Positions 3,146 to 47,034 of a stretch of DNA of 64,000 bases are shown piece by piece. The stretch covers positions 193,179-257,178 of IMG/VR virus record IMGVR_UViG_3300011113_000805. One strand, written 5' to 3'. Both the position numbers and the translations under genes were made by a program. Every line of letters starts with the position of its first letter. The first letter of the stretch is position 1. Under the pieces are notes generated by a model. The model was given only the letters and a program-made list of their open reading frames with translations, was not told the origin of the DNA and searched no databases.

Positions 3146-3421
3146 TTACAAAATTTTTAGACCATCAGGTTTCATACGAAAGTTACGAACATATCCACCT
3201 GATAAAACTTCGAAACTTAGTAAGTCATCATGCGGGCTACATATTTGAGTCCCTGCCGCTAAACCACCAGCTCTCCAATCGCAGCATTTTAGAACTATGA
3301 CAGTAGTTCCTGCAGAAATGACTATTTCTGCAGAGCCATATAGGTGTACATCATACAGAATACTAAATACTTCACCCCTCTTAGAGTTGAAGTATTGAAT
3401 CCATTCCGTGTTTGTTCTCAT
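3146..3421 (-). CDS. Hypothetical protein
   Basis: ORF track. Confidence 0.5.
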   Translation of the reverse strand: MRTNTEWIQYFNSKRGEVFSILYDVHLYGSAEIVISAGTTVIVLKCCDWRAGGLAAGTQICSPHDDLLSFEVLSGGYVRNFRMKPDGLKIL

Positions 3422-3458: not shown

Positions 3459-4844
3459 TTAGTGGCCCATTAAGTGACGCAAAAGTGTTTGCGTCTCTAT
3501 GGCGAGATTTTTGCGAAGTTGTTTTGATTCATTAACGACTATAACTTTTGAAAAGTTCTTTCCTTTATGCCACTGAACATACTTGTTGTCTGTGAATCGA
3601 AGCTCGACCCTTAGCACGTCTTCAAAAAGACCATTAGAATTTTGCAGATCTACAAAATAAGCTATACCAAAATTTTTCCCTTCACGTAAAATGACTTTTG
3701 AAGAGTCATTTCCATCAGGAAGGGTTACATTTGGAATATTCTTTCTGTTAAATTGCACAATTGCATACGAAGCAGCACCATCGATAATTCCAAGCCATTC
3801 ACGTGCCTCAAAAAGGAGTGAATTTTCCCAATCCGGATTTTGAGCCATCTTTTCATGCACGGTCACCAATGAAGGTTCAATAGGTGCTCTTCCTTTGATT
3901 GGGTTCTTGTCTCTTCTCCAAGTAATACCGGTATCAGGTTCACGTGAGACAGATTTGAAAATTTCACTCGAGGACTTCAGGCCATTGTTGATTTTCAATC
4001 GAGAACCACCCAATCTTTTTGTGTCACCCCACTTGACAGAAATGTCAACCTTTTCTCCATTTGAAAGAATTGCAATCATGTCAACAACACCACTTCCACC
4101 AGCAGGTGGATTTCCTGTGACATTTGCACCCTCAAGTGCACCTAAATTGCTGGTTAAATTACTTGTCATGACTCTAATTGCATTAATGAAAATTTCACGA
4201 TCATTAATTCTAGAGTTTGCCCATGCATCGGAAATACGTGTATCTTTAACAAAAAGTTTCTCATCTTCCAAAGATGATGAAACAAATTCATCAAATCCTT
4301 CATTACGACCTGTGGGGGTTTGCTCACCACCTAAAGAAAACCAAACCGCCCACTCAGCGGCATATCCCATCATTTTGTCGCTGGTTAGTGTGCTTTTCCC
4401 ACCTTTTCCTAAGATTGGAATAAATGGTACAACATACATTCCTGATGTCAAATCAGGATGTTGTGTGATCGTGATAAGAAGAGACTCATATTTTCCAGAT
4501 CCTACACCAGATTTTGGCGCAGGATTAGTTCCATCCCATTTTTGAATCTCGATTCCTGGGTTTTTTGCAGCATCTTTAAGGCCGGAAAAAGTCTCTTCGA
4601 ATGTATCCCATGCTGAGACTTTTCCTATTTGAACCGGTGATCCAGGACTAAGGTCTGTCTGTAGTCTTCCTCTATTTGCTGTAACAGGAACGACAATGCC
4701 ACCTGAAAGTTCTGATAGTTTTAATACCACCTCTCTGTGTTGCTTGGTTCCTTCAGCATAAACTTTAAAGCCCTGACTATTGGGGTTTATTGAAGACTCA
4801 TTAAGCTGCTTTAAAAGGATCCGGCAAAGCTCGATTTCTTTCAT
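3459..4844 (-). CDS. Putative PD-(D/E)XK nuclease-like protein with leader motif
   Basis: VDMIA...VDISVKWG; N-terminal LCRILLKQLNE. Confidence 0.4.
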   Translation of the reverse strand: MKEIELCRILLKQLNESSINPNSQGFKVYAEGTKQHREVVLKLSELSGGIVVPVTANRGRLQTDLSPGSPVQIGKVSAWDTFEETFSGLKDAAKNPGIEIQKWDGTNPAPKSGVGSGKYESLLITITQHPDLTSGMYVVPFIPILGKGGKSTLTSDKMMGYAAEWAVWFSLGGEQTPTGRNEGFDEFVSSSLEDEKLFVKDTRISDAWANSRINDREIFINAIRVMTSNLTSNLGALEGANVTGNPPAGGSGVVDMIAILSNGEKVDISVKWGDTKRLGGSRLKINNGLKSSSEIFKSVSREPDTGITWRRDKNPIKGRAPIEPSLVTVHEKMAQNPDWENSLLFEAREWLGIIDGAASYAIVQFNRKNIPNVTLPDGNDSSKVILREGKNFGIAYFVDLQNSNGLFEDVLRVELRFTDNKYVQWHKGKNFSKVIVVNESKQLRKNLAIETQTLLRHLMGH

Positions 4845-17466: not shown

Positions 17467-17538
17467 GTCGAGCTCCGTGATGAGATCTGTTATTATGGCT
17501 AAGCCACTTTGTACAGGTCCTGGGAGCAAATAGTTGAA

Positions 17539-18018
17539 CTATTTTCCGGACTGGAGGTGTTCAACCAGCCACTGAGTTTGAACTTCATATGAAGTAGCCC
17601 TGGCAGCAGTCTGAGCAGTCCGAGCAGCCCAAACAGCAGCCTCAGCAGCCCGATCAGCAGCCATGGTAGTAGTCCAAGAAGCAGCCTCAGCAGCCCGATC
17701 AGCAGCCATGGTAGCAGTCCGAGCATCATAAGCAGCAGCTACCAGCTCCTCAGAAGTGACGCTCTTCTCGTTCTCCAGCCACCGGTCCACCAAGGACAGG
17801 GCATGTGTCACCTTCAGGTCAGGCTCATCCACCAGCAGCGTCAACGTCTCACCGGCACACCATCGAGCAAAGGCGACCAGGTCCCGGTGGGTGATGATGC
17901 CCAGATGCTCATTCCCTCGAAGAAGGATGCAGCTGAGCTGGAGGTTTCGGGTGAGCTCAAGCTCCGACAGAGTCGTCTGCTCACCGGTGACGGGATCGAT
18001 CAAAGTGTACTGGTGCAT
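17539..18018 (-). CDS. Ala-rich Imm5-like paralog
   Basis: Family motifs; start MHQYTL. Confidence 0.8.
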   Translation of the reverse strand: MHQYTLIDPVTGEQTTLSELELTRNLQLSCILLRGNEHLGIITHRDLVAFARWCAGETLTLLVDEPDLKVTHALSLVDRWLENEKSVTSEELVAAAYDARTATMAADRAAEAASWTTTMAADRAAEAAVWAARTAQTAARATSYEVQTQWLVEHLQSGK

Positions 18019-18090
18019 GTCAAGCTCCGTGATGAGATCTGTTATTATGGCTGAGCCACTTTGTACAGGTCCTGGGAGCAAATAGTTGAA

Positions 18091-18638: not shown

Positions 18639-19172
18639 CTATTTTCCGGACTGGAGGTGCTGCTCAAACCACTGAGCTTGGACTTCGTATGAAGTAGCTC
18701 CGGCAGCAGCTCCAGCAGCCCGAGCAGCCCAAACAGCAGCCTCAGCAGCCCGATCAGCAGCCATGGTAGCAGCCCAAGAAGCAGTCTGAGCAGCAGCATG
18801 AGCAGCCCAAGCAGCAGTCTGAGCAGCAATATGAGCAGCCCAAGAAGCCCGAGCAGCAGCCCAAGCAGCCTGAGCAGCTGCTTCAGCAGCGTCTTTCAGC
18901 TCCTCATTGCTGAGGCTCCTCTCATCCTCCAGCCACCGGTCCACCAAGGACAGGGCATGTGTCACCTTCAGGTCAGGCTCATCCACCAGCAGCTTCAGCA
19001 TCTCACCGGCACACCATCGAATGAAGATGACCAGGTCCCGGTGGGTGATGATGCCCAGATGCTCATTCCCTCGAAGAAGGAGGTAGCCAATCTGGAGGTT
19101 TCGGGTGAGCTTAAGCTCCGACAGAGTCCACTGCCGGCCGGTGGCAGGATCAATCAAAGTGTATTTAGGCAT
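18639..19172 (-). CDS. Ala-rich Imm5-like paralog
   Basis: Family motifs. Confidence 0.8.
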   Translation of the reverse strand: MPKYTLIDPATGRQWTLSELKLTRNLQIGYLLLRGNEHLGIITHRDLVIFIRWCAGEMLKLLVDEPDLKVTHALSLVDRWLEDERSLSNEELKDAAEAAAQAAWAAARASWAAHIAAQTAAWAAHAAAQTASWAATMAADRAAEAAVWAARAAGAAAGATSYEVQAQWFEQHLQSGK

Positions 19173-19260
19173 TTCCGAAGCTCCGTGATGAGATCTGTTA
19201 TTATGGCTGAGCCACTTTGTACAGGTCCCGGGAGCACTTTTCTAAAAATGTTTACTCCTT

Positions 19261-19425
19261 CGCTAGTACCGTACGAAGTTTCAACTGTGCATAAAAACCT
19301 CAGTGATGTCTGGATCGCGGTACGAGGTTAGCCTTACCGGTGGTTACCCTCACCGGTGAAAACATTTTCCAGTCAATGTTTTCAATTAAGGTGTCAATCG
19401 GAAACCCGATGACTGGTAACACGAA
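19261..19425 (-). ncRNA. Candidate structured non-coding RNA
   Basis: ORF-free 165 nt with four stems and two loop-bulge pairings; strand inferred from context. Confidence 0.35.
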
Positions 19426-19427
19426 GC

Positions 19428-19613
19428 TCAGCTAGCTGATACTCCGGAGGCCTTGATCTTCAGAAGGAGGGCAGCGTTGGCTGCAATGATGCCACCAACA
19501 ATCGGCAGCAGTACCGGTGCTGAAGGGAGAAGAAGTTGGATGAAACACCACCAACCAAAACCTGCGCCGGTGCCAATGAGGGTGCCAAGAATATGCGACT
19601 TCAGCGTTTCCAT
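19428..19613 (-). CDS. Small two-TM membrane protein
   Basis: Start METLKSH after GGAG; two hydrophobic segments. Confidence 0.55.
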   Translation of the reverse strand: METLKSHILGTLIGTGAGFGWWCFIQLLLPSAPVLLPIVGGIIAANAALLLKIKASGVSAS

Positions 19614-19628
19614 GCTCTCTCCTTTGAA

Positions 19629-19713
19629 TGGTAGCCCCAGCCGGACTCGAACCGGCACGCTCAATGAACAAGAGATTTTGAGTCTCTCGCGTCTTCCGTT
19701 CCGCCATGGGGCC
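19629..19713 (-). tRNA. trnL: tRNA-Leu(CAA)
   Basis: Cloverleaf, long variable arm, CT-CAA-AA loop, GTTCGA, CCA. Confidence 0.92.
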
Positions 19714-19720
19714 AATGAAG

Positions 19721-19795
19721 TGGTGGGTCATCCGAGACTCGAACTCGGAACTAACGGATTAAGAGTCCGCTACTCTACCATTGAGTTAATGACCC
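19721..19795 (-). tRNA. trnK: tRNA-Lys(CTT)
   Basis: CT-CTT-AA loop, T arm, CCA. Confidence 0.95.
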
Positions 19796-19800
19796 GAAGA

Positions 19801-19876
19801 TGGTGGGTTGTCTGGGGCTTGAACCCAGGGCCTACGGATTAAAAGTCCGCTGCTCTACCGACTGAGCTAACAACCC
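19801..19876 (-). tRNA. trnK: tRNA-Lys(TTT)
   Basis: CT-TTT-AA loop, CCA. Confidence 0.95.
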
Positions 19877-19880
19877 ATAA

Positions 19881-19968
19881 TGGAGGAAGCGGTGGGATTC
19901 GAACCCACGATCCCTTTCAGGATGCCGGTTTTCAAGACCGGAGCCTTAAACCGCTCGGCCACGCTTCC
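19881..19968 (-). tRNA. trnS: tRNA-Ser(TGA)
   Basis: CT-TGA-AA loop, long variable arm, CCA. Confidence 0.95.
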
Positions 19969-19972
19969 AAGA

Positions 19973-20047
19973 TGGTACTCCCAACGGGAATCGAACCCGT
20001 GTTACCGGAGTGAAAATCCGGTGTCCTGACCGTTAGACGATGGGAGC
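19973..20047 (-). tRNA. trnE: tRNA-Glu(TTC)
   Basis: TT-TTC-AC loop, CCA. Confidence 0.95.
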
Positions 20048-20050
20048 GAA

Positions 20051-20124
20051 TGGTTGGGGTGGTAGGATTCGAACCCACATAGCCTGATCCAAAGTCAGGC
20101 GTCCTGCCGTTGGACGACACCCCA
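20051..20124 (-). tRNA. trnQ: tRNA-Gln(TTG)
   Basis: CT-TTG-GA loop, U1-A72, CCA. Confidence 0.95.
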
Positions 20125-20141
20125 GTAATGAAAGAATGAAG

Positions 20142-20218
20142 TGGTGCTGAAGGTGGGAATCGAACCCACGGCCTGCGGTTTACAAGACCGCTGCTCTGGC
20201 CAACTGAGCTACTTCAGC
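20142..20218 (-). tRNA. trnT: tRNA-Thr(TGT)
   Basis: CT-TGT-AA loop, CCA. Confidence 0.95.
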
Positions 20219-20460
20219 ATTTTCTCGGCCGTCGCCAGCGACTCATTCACATGAACCCAGCTGCCCTCCCGCAGGAGGATGACACAACCTCCGATAGGCC
20301 AATCCAACAGGGTCGGCGGCAACATGTTCCAGCTGCTCACCCCTGGAGGAAGAGGGTAAGGAATGCAGGTGAGGATCTCATCCCGAGTAAAGACCCGTTC
20401 GGGATAAGTCCACCCGCCGCCGGGGCCAGGGGTAACAATGCTGAAGGTGAGCTCTTCCAC
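20209..20460 (-). CDS. Hypothetical protein inside the tRNA cluster
   Basis: GTG start after GAGG; type A promoter at about 20482-20510; stop lies within tRNA-Thr. Confidence 0.5.
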   Translation of the reverse strand: MEELTFSIVTPGPGGGWTYPERVFTRDEILTCIPYPLPPGVSSWNMLPPTLLDWPIGGCVILLREGSWVHVNESLATAEKMLK

Positions 20461-20542
20461 GTCGACGTCCTCAGGATTAGAATATAATCACTTTGGTGAT
20501 TTTGAACAGGCGGTGCCTGCACTTTCTTCAACTTTTCTTGAG

Positions 20543-20618
20543 TGGCTCCGGCAACAGGACTCGAACCTGTGACCCGCGGATTAACAGTCCGCTGCTCTAC
20601 CGACTGAGCTATGCCGGA
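20543..20618 (-). tRNA. trnN: tRNA-Asn(GTT)
   Basis: CT-GTT-AA loop, CCA. Confidence 0.95.
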
Positions 20619-20623
20619 ATAAG

Positions 20624-20700
20624 TGGTCTCCTCGACAGGACTTGAACCTGTGACCCCCGCGTTAGGAATGCGGTGCTCTATCCAACTGAGCTACGAGGAG
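20624..20700 (-). tRNA. trnR: tRNA-Arg(CCT)
   Basis: TT-CCT-AA loop, A31-C39 mismatch, CCA. Confidence 0.9.
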
Positions 20701-20740
20701 GGGTCGACCACCACCAGGCCCGGTGGTCATGGGCCACGAC

Positions 20741-21835
20741 TCACTTCTTCTTGTCGTTGATGGCCTGGGCGGCCTGGATGACGCTCATGATCTGGTCCTT
20801 CACCAGACCGTGAAACATCTTGATGTTGTTGCTGTTGCCGCTGCTCATGACACCGCTGTGCAGCGCCATCTTGCACTCACCGGTGAGGATGTCGAAGAAC
20901 TTCTTGAGGTTCCCCGCCTGGGCCAGGGTCCACTTGTTCTCCTTCGAGTGGTCCTTGATCTTTTCGATGATCGCCATCTTGCGCTCGGTGCTGAGCTCAC
21001 CGATACGGGCCTCCACCTTGGACCACCGGTTGAGGACGTCCTCCGCCGTGATGACGCTGCTGTAGTTCTTGACAAAGTCGACCAGGGCCGCGGAGGCCTC
21101 GACACCAACGAACCCCAGGGAGAGGGGGTAGAGGATGGCAGGAGGATTGCCACCGCATTCGGTGAGCTCGATGGCGGCCGCCTTCAGAGCACGGTCGAGC
21201 ATCGCCCAGGAGCGCTGGCTGGGAGCCACCTTGCCGGGCTCCACGGCCTTGGTGGGGCGGAGGTGAGCAGGCTGCAGCCGAATGAAGTCGATCAGCAGTT
21301 CATTGATGTCGCCCTCGGTCTTCGCCCAAACGAGCCAGTCCTCCACCGAGGGCTTGAACTCGACCACCCAGAACCGGCTCAGGAGGGCCGGGTCCATCTC
21401 GGAGACGGTGTAGTCACCGCCCCAGTTCACTGCCGCAACCACCTGGGTGCCCGGGTGCAGGCGCTTGGGCTTGCCGTCGGGACCGGACCCGAGCTCACGA
21501 TCCAGGACGATCTGGAACATGCTGTTCAGCACGCCGGGCAGGCCGCGGTTGAGCTCATCGAGGAAGAGGACGCAGGGCTCGTTGCAGGCCCGAACGTACC
21601 ACGACGGCAGCGCGAAGGAGGCGACACCGGTTTCCTTCGTACGCTCGAGGTCGGGGTAGCCGACGACATCACCTTCGGACATCGTGGAGGCACGCACGTC
21701 GATGAGCTCGAGGCCGCGGCGGTGGGCGAGCTGGTGAACGAGCTGGGACTTGCCAACACCGTGGTCGCCGCGGATGAGCACAGCCTGTGCGGCCGGGAGT
21801 GCATTGAGGCAGGTGACGAGGGTCTTCGCGTCCAT
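20741..21835 (-). CDS. MoxR-like AAA+ ATPase
   Basis: Walker A GDHGVGKS, Walker B LFLDELNR, MDPALLSRF. Confidence 0.88.
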   Translation of the reverse strand: MDAKTLVTCLNALPAAQAVLIRGDHGVGKSQLVHQLAHRRGLELIDVRASTMSEGDVVGYPDLERTKETGVASFALPSWYVRACNEPCVLFLDELNRGLPGVLNSMFQIVLDRELGSGPDGKPKRLHPGTQVVAAVNWGGDYTVSEMDPALLSRFWVVEFKPSVEDWLVWAKTEGDINELLIDFIRLQPAHLRPTKAVEPGKVAPSQRSWAMLDRALKAAAIELTECGGNPPAILYPLSLGFVGVEASAALVDFVKNYSSVITAEDVLNRWSKVEARIGELSTERKMAIIEKIKDHSKENKWTLAQAGNLKKFFDILTGECKMALHSGVMSSGNSNNIKMFHGLVKDQIMSVIQAAQAINDKKK

Positions 21836-21947
21836 GATGACGTCCTTTTCCTGAGGGTTTGTGGGGTTTCGGAACCATTCCGCCCCAACAAGATGAATAT
21901 AATCACTTTCGGTCAAGTTGAACAGGTACCGGAGCACCTTTTTGCAA

Positions 21948-41904: not shown

Positions 41905-42100
41905 TGATCACCTCCAACCGGTCCTCAGGCATGCGCCAGTGGGGACTCCCATTGACCATCAACCAGAAGTACCTCACATTTAGGTCGTTGAAGTCGTACG
42001 GTTCACGCGCCTCTCTGAGGATCAGGCCCACAAGTCCATCATAGCGATCGGGCTCATCATCCTCATCGGGAATCAGGCGGACGAGATCACCCGGCTTCAT
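41891..42100 (-). CDS. KPGDLV (KOW/SH3-like) small protein
   Basis: MKPGDLVRL. Confidence 0.65.
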   Translation of the reverse strand: MKPGDLVRLIPDEDDEPDRYDGLVGLILREAREPYDFNDLNVRYFWLMVNGSPHWRMPEDRLEVISEAR

Positions 42101-42371
42101 CGATCACCTCCACATTAGCCTCGTCCACCCAGACCCAGCGAGGTAAACCGTCGATCAGGAGGAGGGCAGCGTCCACGGACGGCTCGTTGGCGGCGGGAAG
42201 GGCGGAGGCGGTGGCTCGTAGACGGGCACTGGGGAAGTCGGCGGCGGAGTCCAAGATGAGGCAGATCCGACCTGGGCTCTTGTCCCAGCCTCTGCCATCA
42301 TACCAGAAGAGCTGGGATTTGATTTGAAGCAGGCCGCCCTTGTGGGCTTGAAGGGTCTCAAGAAGGGTCAT
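42087..42371 (-). CDS. Paralog family H protein
   Basis: AHKGGLL...RGWD...RICLILD...LLIDGLPRW. Confidence 0.7.
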   Translation of the reverse strand: MTLLETLQAHKGGLLQIKSQLFWYDGRGWDKSPGRICLILDSAADFPSARLRATASALPAANEPSVDAALLLIDGLPRWVWVDEANVEVIDEAG

Positions 42372-42762
42372 GTCCCATCCCTGCGAGGCACCCCTTCAAC
42401 CAAGAAAGCCATTCCGTTTCGCACCCGATGTGATCCGCTGGATTGATGATCGATGGGAATCCGGCCGACTGAAGGGTGGCCAGCATCTCCTCACGGACAC
42501 CCTCGAGGCCTGTGGTGGAGGTGATGATGACAGGAGTCCCGGAATACCACTCTTCAGCGACCCAGCGTGCCCACATCCTTCCGTCCTGATGAGGCATATC
42601 GTGATCGAGAAGGATCCCATCGAACTGTGTGCGGCCTTCGAGGATGAATGTTTCAGCAAACTCCGGGTCGCAGGTGATGATCCACCGGTGCTTCTCCCGG
42701 TCCAGCATTTGGGTGAACTCGTCATAGCGGGATGGACAATCATCGATGATAAGAAAACGCAT
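42358..42762 (-). CDS. Stand-alone receiver-like domain protein
   Basis: FLIIDD...ILLDHDMP..DG...PVIITS. Confidence 0.7.
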   Translation of the reverse strand: MRFLIIDDCPSRYDEFTQMLDREKHRWIITCDPEFAETFILEGRTQFDGILLDHDMPHQDGRMWARWVAEEWYSGTPVIITSTTGLEGVREEMLATLQSAGFPSIINPADHIGCETEWLSWLKGCLAGMGHDPS

Positions 42763-42814
42763 GTTAGGTCCTTTGTGTTTTACTATACCACATGGGCGGA
42801 TGGGTTGCATAGGT

Positions 42815-43048
42815 TCACGAGATCACCTCCGAGAAATCCTCGAGCTCTGCGTCGGTTCGCTCATCAATCAACCCATCCCGAAGGATCGACCAGAGGCGAA
42901 CATGTGATCCTCCATGAAGTCCCAACTGGATCGGCGTGACCATCCTGTGATCGAGGATGAGAAACACCTTTCCGTCCAACGATGAAAGACGCTTGTTCCA
43001 TCGGCGAAGCTGGCCCTTCTCGATCACTTTCCCTCCATCATTACACAC
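42815..43048 (-). CDS. Hypothetical protein
   Basis: IEKGQLRRW. Confidence 0.55.
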   Translation of the reverse strand: MCNDGGKVIEKGQLRRWNKRLSSLDGKVFLILDHRMVTPIQLGLHGGSHVRLWSILRDGLIDERTDAELEDFSEVIS

Positions 43049-43481
43049 AACTTGGGCAGTAATGCCACTCGAGCTAATCAGCTCCGTGTTCGCAGTGCGT
43101 TCCTTTCTTTATCCATCCCGACTGGGAGATCTAGGGGTGGTTTGATGCGGGCATCGCAAGAGTTGCATTGGATCTCGACCAAGATTCGCTTTTTGTTGTC
43201 TTCACGAACCGCATAGATTTTCACTTTCCCTCCATCTCAGCCTTCCGCTCCAGGATCCTCTCCCGCTTCTTCTTGAGTGACCGGATGTTGGAGCGGCACT
43301 CCTTCACATTGAGGAGGGCGCACCTCAGTCGGGATTCCTCCTCCCTCAAGTCGGCCTCGCAGACCTTCAGCATCGTGTTGATCTGCCAGGCATCGAGCGG
43401 GACCTTCCTCGAGGGAATTGTGGAATCGGAGGCTTGTTCCTAACGCCAGTTCTCGATGGTCTCCTGGTCAAAGTTGGGCAT
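43041..43481 (-). pseudogene. Two adjacent decayed genes (coiled-coil gene with in-frame TAG; Zn-ribbon gene with frameshift and TAG)
   Basis: Hand translation of 43221..43481 and 43041..43224. Confidence 0.5.
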
Positions 43482-43795
43482 TACTCCTCCAACCCGAGTA
43501 CCCGCATTGCCCGGCGCTTTCCACGAAGCCAGAACTCATTCGTCTCCTCCCAGTCGCCGCCCTCGTTGGTGTCATCGTTCTCGACGTACCAGCGGAGGCA
43601 CTCATTGATCTTCTTGAGCTCCTTGTCCCGCTCGTTCAGGAGGACATTGAGTCGACCGATCTCGGCGTAAAGTGAGGCCCATGCGGATTGTTCGGGCATC
43701 GGGATCGAATCGGGCAGGGGATTGATGCCCCAGTAAGTGTGATTCGGGCAGCTGACATTGTTTCCGGCGATTCCGCAACTGGGACAGGTGGTCAT
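43481..43795 (-). CDS. Hypothetical protein with Cys motif and coiled coil
   Basis: GGAG RBS; CPSC. Confidence 0.6.
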   Translation of the reverse strand: MTTCPSCGIAGNNVSCPNHTYWGINPLPDSIPMPEQSAWASLYAEIGRLNVLLNERDKELKKINECLRWYVENDDTNEGGDWEETNEFWLRGKRRAMRVLGLEE

Positions 43796-43804
43796 GGGTT
43801 CTCC

Positions 43805-44092
43805 TTAGTATCCAAAGATTCCAAAGATCAGATTCAATTGGCCAATCGAGCAGTCCTTATCGTGACCCTGATTGGTGTACCCCGAACAGCAGAAGTATGG
43901 ATCGTAGATTCGACCGTAACCCCCATCACGATTGTACTCGATGAAGGAAGGCATGTCACCAACGAGGACCTCGATCCTCTTAAGGAGTTCACGACACTGG
44001 GAATCGGTGAGGTCATCAATCTTCACGTTGTAGAACTCGGTGGTCATTCTTCCTCCTTTCCGTTGTCCAGGATTTCCAGGTCCTTCTCCCAT
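43805..44092 (-). CDS. Hypothetical protein
   Basis: ORF track; likely start MTTEF. Confidence 0.55.
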   Translation of the reverse strand: MGEGPGNPGQRKGGRMTTEFYNVKIDDLTDSQCRELLKRIEVLVGDMPSFIEYNRDGGYGRIYDPYFCCSGYTNQGHDKDCSIGQLNLIFGIFGY

Positions 44093-44304
44093 CCCCAGAA
44101 CGTGAAGTGCTCAAGCTCACCAGGTTCGAGGTAGTACTTTTCTACAGTGAGAAGCTCAATCTCGATCGATCCATGATTTTCCGGTGAAAGTGGACCGTCA
44201 TCCTCCCAGAGGCTGATGTCTCGAACGATGCCGGTCCAGCGGTCTCCCCTCTTGTAGAAGTAAGAACCCTTCTTCGGGGCGACAGTGTCTCCGACCTTGA
44301 TCAT
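44044..44304 (-). CDS. KOW/SH3-like small protein
   Basis: MIKVGDTV. Confidence 0.6.
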   Translation of the reverse strand: MIKVGDTVAPKKGSYFYKRGDRWTGIVRDISLWEDDGPLSPENHGSIEIELLTVEKYYLEPGELEHFTFWGWEKDLEILDNGKEEE

Positions 44305-44507
44305 TCCTCCTCCTTTACGACCTTGATCTCATTCTTGGGAACATTCAGGACCAGGCGCATGTACTTCTGTGCATCCTCGAGGTCGTAGAACATGGCGCGG
44401 GCGGTCGGTCCGTCCTCATCCTCGGTGATGATCCAGTAGACATCGGAGTCATCGCAGTTGTACACATCGACCGGGGCGCACTCGATGTAGGGATTCGTCA
44501 TCCTCAC
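44301..44507 (-). CDS. Hypothetical protein
   Basis: Coupled ORF. Confidence 0.55.
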   Translation of the reverse strand: MRMTNPYIECAPVDVYNCDDSDVYWIITEDEDGPTARAMFYDLEDAQKYMRLVLNVPKNEIKVVKEEE

Positions 44508-44701
44508 TCCAATTTCAGGGAGGCGTTAGGAAGGTGATGGACAAGGGTGTCCTTGGGGAAATGATGTAGGTTGCCGGACTGGAGGTTCACGGCGGTGTCC
44601 TCGGCATCGACCTTCATGAATGGGCCACCAAAGTTGAACACCTCACCAACCTCCAGGTCCACGAAACGGGTCTCACCGGTTTCCTTGCGATTGATCTTCA
44701 T
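44504..44701 (-). CDS. Hypothetical protein (paralog of 28081..28323)
   Basis: Motif similarity. Confidence 0.6.
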   Translation of the reverse strand: MKINRKETGETRFVDLEVGEVFNFGGPFMKVDAEDTAVNLQSGNLHHFPKDTLVHHLPNASLKLE

Positions 44702-47034
44702 TCATTCTCCTTTGTGTTATCATACCCACCGTCATCGGGATTTACAACCTGCAGGTTCTCCTTCGCCCAGGGCTGGAGTTCCCCGTCGATCAGGACCCAC
44801 CAGTCGCACCAGGAGTTGATGGGATGGCCATCCTCAAGGGAAACAGGTTCCATGATAATGCCATAGAGGCCTAGAATGCCTGCGTCGATCTCATAGCCTT
44901 CCTTAGCATTTACCGTGACAACAAGATCACCTGGTTTCATCAAAGACATTGATCACATCAATTAAGGTTATTGGAAAATAGGGATGACTTAAGACATAAT
45001 TCGGAAACTTGATTTTGATATCAAAGAATTCTATTGTGCCGCCGCGCTGATTACAAGAGATAACAATTCCAAATTGACCTTGAACATCATATGCTCTATC
45101 TGGACCGGGTACAAGACGAACAAGATCTCCAACATTTACCTTCATAGGGTTTCACCTTTAGCAAGGAGAGTAATAATCAGATACCGGTTTTCCTTGAACA
45201 TCTAACAACCAATCTGTTGGTGTCCACATGAGTTTGTCATGCATAAAAATTTGGGACCATTTGACCATTTGAAGACCGGATCCAGTAAAATATCGCTGTA
45301 CTTCAATGACCAGCATGGATTCTTGAGCATTACATGAATGCATCATTATTGAACCATCTTCAATGTCCAATTCATCATAGAGTGGTGTGCCCTTAACTAG
45401 AGTTACTAGGTCACATAGCTCCATCAATAATCTCCAAATGACGGTCATAAATGTCATATGACACACCATTAAACATTACAGTTGATCCCATTACATCTAT
45501 GCCTGGCGATATAAATGACTTCCAGCCACCGATAACGATTCCAATGGTATCTCGTTCTGGACTATCTGTTAGTAGTCGAAACTTATGCGGTCTATACCAG
45601 AATTTGTAATCCTCATTGGGGGCTGGCCTGAACCTAACAAGAGTCCCAACGGGAAGATGGCCTTTGATGAACCTATAGAGCCAATAATAGATTTCATGAA
45701 AAATTTTCATTGATAGTCGCTAAGTATTCCTCATCAACCCAGCCAATTTGCCCATTATGCAGGACTTGCACCATTTCATTGACCGCGTCCCACCCTTTAA
45801 GTAGAATACCAATCTCGCCGCGCTCCCAGCTCTTCTTTTGCTTAGCATACAATCCTGTCGGGATTCGATCATAAATGTAGACAGAAGTGATAGGAACCCT
45901 ATAGGTGATGTTCCACTTGCGGATTGTAACAAGATCGCCGGGTTTCATGTGATTGCCTTCGAATCTTTGCAAAAAGGCATAGACAAAATTCAATTTTCAT
46001 TGGCACGCTATGAAAGCGTAAGGCTCCATTCACATTTTATGCAATCACTTCGAAATTTTCATAAACTAATAGCACACCTAAACAACCATTAACACTAAGC
46101 CTTCCATGTCTTGTTAACTCAGGCTTGGCTGGGAAATAGAAAAATCCACGACCTGTGATACGCATACCATTGGGCATCACAATTCCATCCGGATAATCAT
46201 GATGATCCCAATCAATATCCATAAGAATTGCGAAATCATCTTTGACTATTCCCATATGTTCTAAATCATCAACAATAACTCTGACAAGATCGCCGGGTTT
46301 CATAGTGGTTCATGCTCGTCACTGTATACCCAATGAATAGCACCATTCACAAGAATTTGAGACCGGTCTCTCTTCGTAAATCCGCCAGATATTGAGCCCA
46401 TGAAAACTGCGACAGTTCCGATTGGAACCCAATTCTTGTGAAAGGAAGGTTCGAATTGACCCAATAAAACCTTGTCTTGGTTTTTGTAGGATACTAATTT
46501 GATAAGATCACCAGGTTTCATGAAACCACTCTAGAGCTGATGGGCTGATATCAAAAATTTCTCCGTTAATAACACAAGAAATAAGACCAAGTTCGGAATT
46601 AAACATATCACTTGAACGGCCTAATACAAGACAGATTGTTCCTGATTTTGTGCCTCGCACACCTAATGGATAACGAAGTGTAACCAGGTCACCAGCTCTT
46701 ACAGGCTGTGTGCAACCATATTGGGATTCAGTGGTCCAAAAGATAATCGGCGCATCGCTCATGTGATCACCTTAACACGACAATCAAATTTCCTAACTTT
46801 CCACCTGGGAATGCAATCAATCAAATTATTGTCAACTAGAACTGTGTAATAACGTCTTAACGACGAACCAGTGATTTTGATTATAAGTCCTGGAAACCAA
46901 TCTTGTTCTTCTGTAACCCAAACCCAGCAAATATCACCAGGGCTGATGTCTGTTTCATGATTGATTACATTCAAACTAAATGTGCTCGAGATGGTATTCA
47001 GATACCCAGATAATCTCACCTGTAGTAAAATCAA
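44698..47034 (-). other. Run of overlapping small KPGDLV/KOW-SH3-like genes (44698, 44927, 45158, 45411, 45694, 46037, 46300, 46508, 46759)
   Basis: Repeated (K/V/S)(P/V)GDL(V/I) motifs and a C-terminal hydrophobic-NG/DG turn. Confidence 0.6.

What the first reader, a model, noticed from the sequence alone, without database searches (positions are those of the whole stretch)
19261..19425. Candidate double-pseudoknot ncRNA downstream of the tRNA operon
Pairings on + coordinates: gtaccg 19266-71 with cggtac 19318-23, crossing aacctc 19296-301 with gaggtt 19324-29; hairpin 19336-42/19351-57; hairpin 19358-66/19375-83, whose loop ccagtc matches gactgg 19411-16 bulged from a further stem (19391-19422). 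The region is ORF-free. Phage tRNA clusters often carry structured RNAs (known). I do not recognise the family.
Basis: partly seen in the sequence, partly recalled or inferred. Interest (0 to 1): 0.6.

Follow-up and report, generated by a model that had tools for sequence, protein, structure and literature searches.

The report
Structured pseudoknot RNA after phage tRNA operon
The spacer after a jumbo phage's tRNA cluster encodes a conserved, folded RNA of about 170-200 bases on the minus strand, with several hairpins and one pseudoknot kept by compensatory mutations in three phage lineages; it matches no described RNA family and its function is unknown.

Summary
Within this one sequence they barely exceed chance: six stems of 6 bp or more against 2.7 expected, and folding z-scores of -2.1 to -2.5. 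The comparative evidence is what makes the element real.

The window is the end of a 257-kb uncultivated freshwater jumbo phage. All genes here are on the minus strand. The spacer is the 3' untranslated region of a 61-aa membrane-protein gene that directly follows nine tRNA genes.

Relatives from three lineages are about 50% identical at silent codon positions.

G.U pairs favour the minus strand.

No Rfam family matches, and ARAGORN calls no tRNA or tmRNA there. Contigs from two metatranscriptome libraries span the element, which fits transcription but does not prove it.

My best reading is a folded 3'-terminal domain of the tRNA-ORF61 transcript, acting in RNA stability or processing and perhaps released as a stable RNA. 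This is a new RNA family of narrow distribution.

The parts
19629..20700 (-). Cluster of nine tRNA genes (Arg, Asn, Thr, Gln, Glu, Ser, Lys, Lys, Leu), interrupted by an 83-aa ORF; this is the upstream part of the same transcription unit.
   Evidence: ARAGORN and Rfam tRNA hits. The same cluster is present in relatives L012, L022, L024 and L033.
19431..19613 (-). ORF61, a 61-aa protein with two hydrophobic segments. An AAGGAG ribosome-binding site sits 7 nt upstream of its ATG, 15 nt after tRNA-Leu; the stop codon TGA is at 19428-19430. The element is its 3' UTR.
   Evidence: Homologues are 75-98% identical in protein while third codon positions are only 46-56% identical, so it is a real coding gene. 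There is no Pfam family, and the family is a single cluster in 1.84 billion representatives.
19393..19413 (-). Hairpin H1: 19406-19413 pairs with 19393-19401, with one bulged U and a 4-nt loop.
   Evidence: It is in the minimum-energy fold of all 7 variants. Window against L022 shows two double compensatory changes and one C-G to U.G change. Lineage C has a 9-bp hairpin of unrelated sequence at the same place, with U.G/G.U variants.
19357..19384 (-).
   Evidence: It is in the minimum-energy fold of all 7 variants. Stem sequences differ in each lineage (four double changes between window and L022), while the loop CUGG is invariant.
19336..19357 (-).
   Evidence: RNAalifold finds it on the unbiased alignment. 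Pairs 94-97/112-115 are invariant, so it is conserved but has no covariation.
19296..19329 (-). Stem-loop B/D. Stem B is 19324-19329 with 19296-19301. Inner stem D is 19314-19317 with 19304-19307, with loop CCAGAC at 19308-19313. The 5' side of the internal loop (19318-19323) is the pseudoknot strand. A run of U follows the stem in all lineages.
   Evidence: B has 2 pairs with double changes and D has 2. Two of the three SNPs of the near-identical L012 type turn a C.A in D into U.G, and the third gives G.U in B.
19266..19323 (-). Pseudoknot helix A: 19318-19323 (GUACCG, internal loop of B/D) pairs with 19266-19271 (CGGUAC, loop of hairpin C).
   Evidence: paired in 100% of cells in 7 variants. 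Two pairs have changes on both sides (G-C to A-U and A-U to G-C) and one changes from C-G to U.G. With the partner slid by 1-3 columns, 34-60% of cells over all four helices of the 3' domain pair and 0-1 pairs show a double change.
19279..19295 (-). Conserved single-stranded linker (U-run, then CAGUUGAAAC). Positions 19287-19290 may pair with 19419-19422 as long-range helix F, closing the multi-helix junction.
   Evidence: Columns 165-174 are invariant. Helix F is 92.9% paired, with 2 double changes between two lineages, and is half broken in L022.
19258..19278 (-). Hairpin C: a 6-bp stem (19273-19278 with 19258-19263) and a 9-nt loop, six of whose bases form helix A.
   Evidence: 100% paired, with one double change (U-A to C-G) and two single changes through G.U.
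19231..19257 (-). Hairpin E: an A/T-rich inverted repeat with flanking GGAG/CUCC. It is the counterpart of the hairpin that starts every copy of the repeated cassette unit, so it probably marks the boundary rather than part of the fold.
   Evidence: It is invariant in all lineages, so uninformative for covariation. Comparison of 18 cassette copies is.
19173..19236 (-). One copy of the promoter/5'-UTR-like cassette repeat (CTGTACAAAGTG, 8 nt, ATAATAACAGATCTCATCACGGAG, then the ATG of the paralog gene at 19172). This is the downstream boundary of the element.
   Evidence: About 20 copies, all on the - strand. No sigma-70-like site was found.

Best explanation
The spacer encodes a genuine, evolutionarily maintained RNA structure read from the minus strand. 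It is about 170 nt (19427 to 19258), or about 200 nt with the boundary hairpin to 19231.

It is the 3' untranslated part of one transcription unit: ATPase gene, nine tRNAs, then the 61-aa membrane-protein gene. It ends just before the next cassette promoter.

The fold has two parts. The first is a fast-evolving 5' half made of hairpins H1, H2 and H3, with an extra hairpin over the stop codon in two lineages. The second is a sequence-conserved 3' half. There the 5' side of the internal loop of stem-loop B/D pairs over 6 bp with the loop of hairpin C, forming the pseudoknot. A 17-nt linker between them includes a 10-nt invariant core.

Shown: the structure, its conservation, the strand, single copy per genome, restriction to one small phage clade, and absence from Rfam.

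Inferred: the element works in cis as a compact 3'-terminal domain of the tRNA-ORF61 transcript. It would define and protect the 3' end against exonucleases and guide processing after the tRNAs are cut out. It may survive as a stable small RNA, as RNA C and RNA D do in phage T4.

I put the structural claim at about 0.85-0.9 and this functional reading at about 0.4.
For: Context: the tRNAs and all nearby genes are on the - strand.

Homologous loci were found through ORF61 and a DNA pattern. They give 7 distinct variants in 3 lineages from different metagenomes.

Divergence is near saturation: third codon positions of ORF61 are 46-56% identical and the 5' half of the element 44-55%. The 3' half is 70-83% identical.

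Independent minimum-energy folds recover H1 and H2 in all 7 variants. RNAalifold on an unfitted MAFFT alignment recovers H2, H3, B+D, C and E, with 13 pairs showing compensatory change.

For the 3' domain, 92.9% of cells pair and 7 of 22 pairs show double changes. None of 500 shuffles reaches the observed covariation score or the observed percentage paired. Slid controls give 34-60% paired and 0-1 double changes. The pseudoknot helix is 100% paired with 2 double changes.

Strand: 14 G.U cells against 1 C.A cell in the 3' domain, or 6 if the doubtful pair 122-155 is counted. Further G.U pairs occur in H1 and H2 of the relatives.

All three SNPs of the near-identical L012 type fall in helices B and D and keep or improve pairing.

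The link to the upstream unit is strict, while the gene downstream differs between lineages and even between near-identical contigs.

Two metatranscriptome libraries hold contigs spanning the element. One of 1802 nt covers 19180-20975 and one covers 19180-19578. Their depth is 2-4 times that of contigs on the flanking protein genes, whereas DNA run X1 is flat at about 45-53 from the element through the ATPase gene, rising only over the tRNA bins and the repeat-rich paralog gene.
Against: - Only three deep lineages exist, so the compensatory changes trace to few branches. No R-scape-type test was possible.
- Transcription, RNA ends and strand are not shown. Only assembled contigs of RNA libraries were available, DNA carry-over cannot be excluded, and contig depth is a poor measure.
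- A merely protective 3' UTR would not need 10 invariant unpaired bases in the linker and a pseudoknot. That pattern is more typical of a binding site or a catalytic core.
- H3 and E have no covariation.
- The U-run after stem B could mean that many transcripts end before hairpin C, which would make the pseudoknot irrelevant for them.
- The folding z-score of the single sequence is modest.
Confidence: 0.42

Rival explanations
1. A trans-acting phage non-coding RNA cut out of the operon transcript. It would bind and titrate a host or phage protein, for example a nuclease, a defence sensor or an RNA chaperone, or it would pair with other RNAs. T4 RNA C and RNA D are the nearest precedent (late small RNAs of unknown function; that they lie in the T4 tRNA region is from my memory).
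For: The unpaired sequence is invariant (CAGUUGAAAC in the linker, CUGG in the H2 loop, CAG in the D loop) alongside covarying helices. This pattern is typical of RNAs that are recognised by a partner. The element sits at the end of a tRNA operon. T4 RNA C and D are described as RNAs of unknown function in PMC9697503. The linker resembles the core of the hairpins that follow the cassette genes, which could allow RNA-RNA contacts.
Against: There is no evidence of a discrete small RNA, because no raw reads were available. No partner is known. No processing site was identified.
Confidence: 0.2
2. A row of plain hairpins serving as terminators or decay barriers, with no higher-order fold. Stem B/D plus its U-run would be the intrinsic terminator of the operon, and the pseudoknot complementarity would be incidental.
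For: A run of 4-5 U follows stem B in every lineage. Hairpins H0-H3 evolve freely in sequence, as stabiliser hairpins do. The cassette genes nearby also end in a hairpin.
Against: - Helix A is paired in all 7 variants through four pairwise-compensating substitutions.
- Hairpin C and the linker lie beyond the U-run, yet they are the most conserved part of the element.
- The terminator scan did not call stem B, whose loop is 22 nt.
Confidence: 0.12
3. A cis-regulatory leader, either riboswitch-like or a protein-binding attenuator, that controls the cassette promoter or gene lying downstream.
For: The architecture is aptamer-like, with a pseudoknot and invariant unpaired bases. A perfectly conserved Shine-Dalgarno-like AAGGAG is half buried in stem C and hairpin E. 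The element lies upstream of a gene.
Against: - The downstream gene differs between lineages and between near-identical contigs, whereas the upstream unit is constant.
- A complete cassette unit of the kind that precedes about 20 other genes lies between the element and the gene.
- No start codon stands at a conserved distance, and a 1-nt indel shifts any upstream reading frame.
- No Rfam riboswitch matches.
Confidence: 0.1
4. A self-cleaving ribozyme that cuts the operon transcript. The 3' domain has the helix topology of a pistol ribozyme with its P1 hairpin moved to the 3' side. It also has the B-A-D-B-A strand order of the HDV-like nested pseudoknot.
For: A 6-bp pseudoknot joins a hairpin loop to the junction between two stacked helices. 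The opposite junction strand is a 2-nt invariant CU, and the helix lengths are close to those of pistol (pistol description in PMC6154101). Pistol ribozymes are often near phage genes.
Against: No Rfam ribozyme model matches, even at E up to 10, in the window or in two relative lineages. The strand order differs from pistol. No unpaired purines lie between the pseudoknot strand and stem D, where pistol has its catalytic bases. The junction dinucleotide is CU, not GU. There is no candidate catalytic C before the 3' pseudoknot strand, as HDV-like ribozymes have. The resemblance is one of topology only.
Confidence: 0.06
5. No RNA function: the complementarity is chance, or the inverted repeats act in DNA, for example as protein-binding palindromes or recombination sites next to the shuffling cassettes.
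For: The single-sequence statistics are weak. The region borders a recombination-prone cassette array.
Against: Hairpins and long-range helices are kept while neutral sites are near saturation. The compensatory changes lie 50 nt apart. There are many G.U pairs that would be A.C mismatches in DNA or on the other strand.
Confidence: 0.04

Closest known systems
Phage T4 RNA C and RNA D (small stable RNAs of the T4 tRNA region)
   Same: Both are phage-encoded small RNAs of unknown function (PMC9697503). From my own knowledge, not tested here, they are encoded next to the phage tRNA genes and made from the same precursors.
   Different: No sequence or structure comparison was possible because no model is held. 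The element here follows a protein-coding gene as its 3' UTR. A discrete RNA species has not been shown.
Pistol self-cleaving ribozyme (Rfam RF02679) and the pseudoknot-containing hammerhead of the same connectivity
   Same: Both have three helices plus a 6-bp pseudoknot between a hairpin loop and the junction strand joining two stacked helices. Both have a very short opposite junction strand and occur near phage genes (PMC6154101; PMC11300833; helices).
   Different: Here the hairpin lies 3' of the two-helix arm, so the order is circularly permuted. The conserved pistol core bases and the GU cleavage dinucleotide are absent. The hammerhead core CUGANGA is not kept (columns 153-154 vary and covary in stem B). 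No covariance-model match was found. Catalysis is untested.
HDV-like ribozymes (nested double pseudoknot)
   Same: The strand order B5'-A5'-D hairpin-B3'-...-A3' equals P1-P2-P3-P1-P2.
   Different: There is no P1.1 and no P4 hairpin in two of the three lineages. The 3' pseudoknot strand sits inside a hairpin loop. No unpaired C lies before it. No Rfam match was found.
Structured bacterial and phage 3' UTRs with stabiliser hairpins or intrinsic terminators
   Same: The position is right after a stop codon. There is a series of stable hairpins whose sequences drift while the pairing is kept, and a U-run after one stem.
   Different: Ordinary 3' UTR hairpins have no covarying pseudoknot and no 10-nt invariant single strand.
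Promoter-plus-stem-loop cassettes of T4-type phages (PeSL elements; from memory)
   Same: The unit bordering the element is a hairpin followed by a conserved promoter-like block. It is repeated about 20 times before small variable genes, and neighbouring genes are exchanged between near-identical genomes.
   Different: This concerns the flanking repeat, not the element itself. The boxes are not sigma-70-like.

Membership tests
Any Rfam 15 family (4227 models) | Covariance-model score at or above the gathering threshold, or at least a consistent weak match in several homologues | tested here: not met
   The window at the gathering threshold gives only the 9 tRNAs. Window 19100-19650 at E up to 10 gives three chance hits, all outside 19231-19430. 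Relatives L023, L025 and L026 at E up to 10 give no hit inside the element.
tRNA / tmRNA | Cloverleaf or tRNA-like domain recognised by ARAGORN or the Rfam tRNA clan | tested here: not met
   ARAGORN and Rfam call nothing between 19173 and 19628.
Pistol ribozyme | A 6-bp pseudoknot between the loop of hairpin P1 and the junction strand joining P2 and P3 | tested here: met
   Helix A (6 bp, covarying) joins the loop of hairpin C to the 5' junction strand between stems B and D. The definition is from PMC6154101.
Pistol ribozyme | Strand order P1 hairpin, linker, P2-P3 arm | tested here: not met
   Here the two-helix arm (19296-19329) comes first and the hairpin (19258-19278) last on the RNA strand.
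Pistol ribozyme | About 10 highly conserved core nucleotides, including purine 32, G40 and the G-U cleavage dinucleotide in the P3-P2 junction | tested here: not met
   There are no unpaired bases between helix A and stem D, and the 3' junction is an invariant C-U. The Rfam pistol model gives no match.
Pistol ribozyme / any self-cleaving ribozyme | Site-specific self-cleavage | not testable with these tools
   This needs an in-vitro transcript and a cleavage assay. Assembled contigs cannot show RNA ends.
Hammerhead ribozyme | Invariant core CUGANGA and GAAA around a three-way junction | tested here: not met
   CUGAG (columns 148-152) and GAAAC (169-173) are invariant. However, the positions that would be G8 and A9 (columns 153, 154) vary and covary as pairs of stem B. 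No conserved stem II lies between them. A172 faces G194, not U.
HDV-like ribozyme | Nested double pseudoknot P1/P2/P3 with P1.1, P4 and an unpaired catalytic C before the 3' strand of P2 | tested here: not met
   The order B-A-D-B-A fits P1-P2-P3-P1-P2. However, the bases before 19271 are paired in stem C, no P4 hairpin is conserved, and no Rfam match was found.
Intrinsic (Rho-independent) terminator | G+C-rich hairpin directly followed by a U-run | tested here: inconclusive
   Stem B (5-6 bp, interrupted, 22-nt interior) is followed by 4-5 U at 0-2 nt in all lineages. The consensus scan does not call it. The conserved, covarying parts lie beyond it.
Group I intron | Match to the Rfam Intron_gpI model | tested here: not met
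   There is no match in the window. The model does find a real intron in a tRNA gene of relative L035 (57.5 bits), so the search works.
Type I toxin-antitoxin locus (small hydrophobic toxin with an antisense RNA over its 3' end) | Convergent promoter and an antisense RNA overlapping the toxin mRNA | tested here: inconclusive
   ORF61 is small and hydrophobic. No promoter-like site was found on the + strand, and G.U pairs favour the sense strand. Toxicity was not tested.
T4 RNA C / RNA D | A stable small RNA processed from the tRNA precursor transcript | not testable with these tools
   Only contigs of RNA libraries were available. There is no family model for comparison.

The most novel reading that the evidence does not exclude
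The conserved 3' domain (19258-19329) is the core of a new catalytic or ligand-binding RNA class. The most specific version is a naturally circularly permuted, pistol-like self-cleaving ribozyme. It would cut at the CU junction (19302-19303) and so form the 3' end of the tRNA-ORF61 transcript in a jumbo phage.
Probability: 0.06. Interest if true: 0.85.

Novelty: new variant of a known kind. Interest (0 to 1): 0.5.

Why it matters
Structured RNAs next to phage tRNA genes have been known since T4, and their functions are still open. This case comes with a base-pair model backed by covariation, a defined strand, clear boundaries and a pseudoknot. It is only about 170 nt, small enough to synthesise, probe and assay directly.

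If it is a processing or stability module, it shows how a jumbo phage ends a mixed tRNA-mRNA operon just before a shuffling array of gene cassettes. If it binds a partner or cleaves itself, it would be a new functional RNA class from uncultivated freshwater phages.

The narrow distribution limits its general importance. It occurs in one small clade, once per genome, and only three lineages are known.

Tried and rejected
- **Rfam.** Searched at gathering and at E up to 10, in the window and in two other lineages. Nothing fell in the element.
- **ARAGORN.** No tRNA or tmRNA there.
- **GenBank phages.** blastn gave no match. tblastn of the neighbouring ATPase gave only relatives of 33% identity or less.
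- **IMG/VR.** Two DNA patterns and the ORF61 profile found nothing beyond the own record. ATPase relatives of 36-39% identity (L009-L011) lack the element.
- **ATPase relatives of 67-75% identity (L035-L043).** These have no ORF61 and no element by nhmmer or by covariance model R1.
- **Own genome.** The element is single-copy.
- **ORF61 profile against 1.84 billion representatives.** Only its own cluster was found. The 83-aa ORF search added no usable locus; L045 is too short.
- **Pattern hits L029, L030 and L034.** These are chance matches inside coding regions of gut-bacterial contigs, two of them from a human-gut metagenome assembly. I set them aside and did not use them further.
- **Sigma-70 promoter or terminator scan.** Nothing in the element. 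A sigma-54-like reading of the H2 loop was rejected by eye because the -12 element is missing.
- **Stop-codon readthrough, SECIS or an upstream ORF from a conserved AUU.** Rejected, because the frames are not conserved across 1-2-nt indels.
- **Hammerhead core.** Rejected (see the membership test).
- **T7-like RNA polymerase gene.** None in the 76%-complete record, but the control genomes were also silent, so this is uninformative.
- **Structure-aware MAFFT (Q-INS-i).** Not installed. H1 and H2 were therefore compared by independent folding and by eye, not by a column-wise count. Their loop sizes differ between lineages, so one column register does not fit all.
Not kept in lineage C.
- **Protein folding and complex prediction.** Not used, as they do not bear on this finding.
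Full report
**Setting**

The window is the last 64 kb of a 257-kb linear IMG/VR virus record estimated at 76% complete. It has no close relative among GenBank phages.

Around the finding every gene is on the minus strand. An AAA_5/MoxR-type ATPase gene occupies 20741-21937. Nine tRNA genes occupy 20700-19629, interrupted by an 83-aa ORF. Fifteen bases after tRNA-Leu, behind an AAGGAG ribosome-binding site, comes a 61-aa ORF with two hydrophobic segments (19613-19431, stop at 19430-19428).

The finding is the spacer that follows this ORF. It ends at a repeat of about 60-75 nt that precedes the next gene (19172-18639). That repeat occurs about 20 times in the genome, always on the minus strand and always just before a start codon. 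On the transcribed strand the region is therefore a 3' UTR at the end of a tRNA-containing operon. It is not a free gene directly after the tRNAs.

**Observation**

The first two cross each other.

Taken alone they are not compelling. Dinucleotide shuffles of the 165 nt give on average 2.7 stems of 6 bp or more, against 6 observed (p about 0.055). They give 0.7 stems of 7 bp or more, against 3 observed. The minimum free energy lies 2.5 (+) or 2.1 (-) standard deviations below shuffles.

**Homologues**

The word search with ORF61 found three protein clusters of 98, 81 and 75% identity. Their contigs, plus a DNA-pattern scan of metagenomes, gave the homologous spacer in 7 distinct variants:
- the window;
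- a near-identical type with three SNPs (L012 and nine other contigs);
- L022/L023;
- four variants of a third lineage (L024, L026, L027, L033).

The lineages are well diverged. Third codon positions of ORF61 are only 46-56% identical, while the protein is 75-81% identical.

More distant phages lack the element. These are ATPase relatives of 67-75% identity (L035-L043) and of 36-39% identity (L009-L011). In most of the former the ATPase gene is followed directly or closely by a DUF2201 gene, and neither set has ORF61 or the element.

A profile search of ORF61 against 1.84 billion representative proteins returned only its own cluster. The element is single-copy in the genome. The family is real but narrow.

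**Structure**

Read on the minus strand, the variants share the following features.

- *H1* (19406-13 with 19393-401). Window against L022 shows two double compensatory changes and one C-G to U.G change. The third lineage has a 9-bp hairpin of unrelated sequence at the same place. Two of its variants differ by adjacent substitutions that give U.G and G.U.
- *H2* (19375-84 with 19357-66). It has 9-10 bp in every lineage, each with a different stem sequence (four double changes between window and L022), and an invariant CUGG in the loop.
- *H3* (19351-57 with 19336-42). It abuts H2 without a spacer. It is conserved in sequence and so gives no covariation information.
- *Stem B* (19324-29 with 19296-301), enclosing a short stem D (19314-17 with 19304-07).
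- *Hairpin C* (19273-78 with 19258-63).
- *Helix A*. Six bases of the internal loop of B/D (19318-23) pair with six bases of the loop of C (19266-71).

Two lineages have an additional hairpin over the stop codon, which the window lost through a 13-nt deletion.

H1 and H2 appear in the independent minimum-energy folds of all seven variants. RNAalifold on the unfitted MAFFT alignment recovers H2, H3, B+D, C and E.

For the 3' domain, which aligns with only two single-base gap columns, the pair count gives these results:
- 92.9% of cells are paired.
- 7 of 22 pairs have changes on both sides.
- 0 of 500 shuffles reach the observed covariation score or percentage paired.
- With the 3' partner slid by 1-3 columns, only 34-60% of cells pair and 0-1 pairs show a double change.

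Helix A is paired in every variant. GUACCG/CGGUAC in the window becomes AUGCUG/CGGCAU in the third lineage. That is four substitutions that compensate pairwise, plus one C-G to U.G change.

All three SNPs that separate the L012 type from the window lie in B and D. One makes A-U into G.U. The other two together turn a C.A mismatch into U.G.

A four-base long-range helix (19419-22 with 19287-90) would close H1, H2, H3 and B/D into one junction. It has two double changes but is half broken in L022, so I treat it as possible.

**Strand**

In the 3' domain 14 cells are G.U or U.G on the minus strand. These would be A.C on the plus strand. Only one C.A would go the other way, or six if the doubtful pair 122-155 is counted. 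H1 and H2 of the relatives add further G.U pairs. Together with gene orientation this points to a minus-strand RNA. It also argues against a DNA-level palindrome.

**What is not supported**

Only CCAG/CUGG is left, and it becomes CCGG/CUGG in the third lineage after a one-column shift. There is no double change.

CUGG has two other conserved CCAG-like partners: the loop of stem D and the linker. A second tertiary contact is possible, but its partner is undetermined.

**Boundaries**

The last hairpin (E, 19231-19257) is invariant. Comparison of 18 cassette copies shows that an A/T-rich inverted repeat of this kind begins every copy, normally right after the stop codon of the preceding gene. E is therefore the start of the next cassette unit. 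The element proper is the extra ~170 nt (19258-19427) inserted between the ORF61 stop codon and that hairpin.

**Conservation pattern**

The 5' half drifts as fast as silent sites (44-55% identity) yet keeps its helices. The 3' half is 70-83% identical, with ten invariant unpaired bases in the linker. One- and two-base indels between variants exclude a conserved reading frame.

**Expression**

Two metatranscriptome libraries from one freshwater-sediment study hold the L012-type sequence. One contig of 1802 nt runs from inside the cassette repeat (19180) through the element, ORF61 and all tRNAs into the ATPase gene (20975). A second contig covers 19180-19578.

The depth figures are:

| Run | Contigs over the element | Contigs on flanking protein genes |
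|---|---|---|
| X3 (RNA) | 17.2 | 3.1-10.7 |
| X11 (RNA) | 8.3 | 4.2-4.4 near the ATPase 5' end; none laid over most of the gene |
| X1 (DNA) | 52.6 | 44.8 through the ATPase gene; higher in the tRNA and paralog-gene bins |

This fits co-transcription of the element with the tRNA-ORF61 unit. However, contigs show neither strand nor ends, depth per contig is a poor measure, and DNA carry-over cannot be ruled out. Transcription is therefore likely, not shown.

**Comparison with known families**

No Rfam 15 model matches the element, even at E up to 10. This holds for the window and for two other lineages. The same search does find a real group I intron in a tRNA gene of a relative, so it has power.

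The hammerhead core is excluded, because its would-be G8 and A9 vary and covary in stem B.

The 3' domain has the helix topology of the pistol ribozyme: a hairpin loop forms a 6-bp pseudoknot with the junction between two stacked helices, and the opposite junction strand is very short (PMC6154101). But the hairpin is on the other side of the arm, the pistol core bases are missing, and the junction is CU rather than GU.

The strand order also resembles the P1-P2-P3-P1-P2 core of HDV-like ribozymes, but without P1.1, P4 or a candidate catalytic C.

These are resemblances of topology, not memberships.

By context the nearest precedent is T4 RNA C and RNA D, phage small RNAs of unknown function (PMC9697503). 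That they lie in the T4 tRNA region is from my own knowledge.

**Interpretation**

That this is a maintained RNA fold with one pseudoknot I hold at about 0.85-0.9.

For function, the strict link to the upstream tRNA-ORF61 unit matters. So does the free exchange of the downstream gene, even between near-identical contigs. Both argue for a role tied to the upstream transcript.

My best reading, at about 0.4, is a compact 3'-terminal domain that defines and protects the 3' end and guides processing, possibly persisting as a stable RNA.

The invariant single strands and the pseudoknot fit a binding or catalytic role better than simple protection. I therefore keep a trans-acting RNA (0.2), plain terminator hairpins (0.12), a leader for the downstream cassette (0.1) and a ribozyme (0.06) as rivals.

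Read laying was given 3301 letters. Two chance pattern hits came from a human-gut metagenome assembly; they are bacterial-looking coding sequence, and I set them aside and did not search further with them.

Noticed in passing
window 11300-33600 and 52710, minus strand (e.g. 19173-19257, 18022-18090, 17471-17540): There are about 18-20 copies of a ~75-nt cassette unit. Each has an A/T-rich inverted repeat right after the previous stop codon, then GCTCCnGG, CTGTACAAAGTG, 8 nt, ATAATAACAGATCTCATCACGGAG and the ATG. The boxes are not sigma-70-like. The unit looks like a phage-specific promoter plus 5' UTR, and recalls the promoter-stem-loop cassettes of T4-type phages.
   Followed up: partly
window ~10000-34000 (and 42000-45000): A high-G+C island (0.52-0.63) sits in a phage of about 0.40-0.45 G+C. 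It is filled with tandem paralogs of a ~160-180-aa protein: a conserved N-terminal domain plus an Ala/Trp-rich repeat tail ending in HLQSGK. No Pfam family matches.
   Followed up: partly
L012, L013, L014 downstream of position 3383: Contigs with an identical element and identical ORF61 carry different genes after the cassette repeat (140, 195 or 164 aa). The repeat therefore seems to act as a recombination joint for gene cassettes.
   Followed up: no
L035:3764-3965 (tRNA gene about 3740-4030): A relative with a 75% identical ATPase has a group I intron (Rfam 57.5 bits, threshold 50) inside a tRNA gene that ARAGORN did not call. Just upstream, at 3579-3668, is an odd long-arm tRNA-like sequence with a weak tRNA-Sec-like hit.
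   Followed up: partly
window 19279-19288 versus the cassette hairpins (e.g. 24117 and 30624 copies): The invariant linker AGUUGAAACU resembles the palindromic core TAGTT(N1-2)AACTA of the hairpins that follow the cassette genes, and so is complementary to it. This could be a shared protein site, an RNA-RNA contact or a remnant.
   Followed up: no
window 19413-19416, 19310-19313, 19286-19289 versus 19369-19372: CCAG (ACAG in the window's linker) occurs three times in the element. Each copy is complementary to the invariant CUGG of the H2 loop, so there are three alternative tertiary partners.
   Followed up: partly
window 19431-19613, minus strand: The 61-aa two-helix membrane protein sits directly behind tRNA-Leu. 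Its family is a single cluster at 50% identity among 1.84 billion representative proteins. Its function is unknown; a holin-like or toxin-like role was not tested.
   Followed up: partly
window 20741-21937 and relatives L038-L043: In more distant relatives the MoxR-type ATPase gene is followed directly or closely by a DUF2201/VWA gene. In this clade the tRNA cluster, ORF61, the element and the cassette array lie between the two genes.
   Followed up: no
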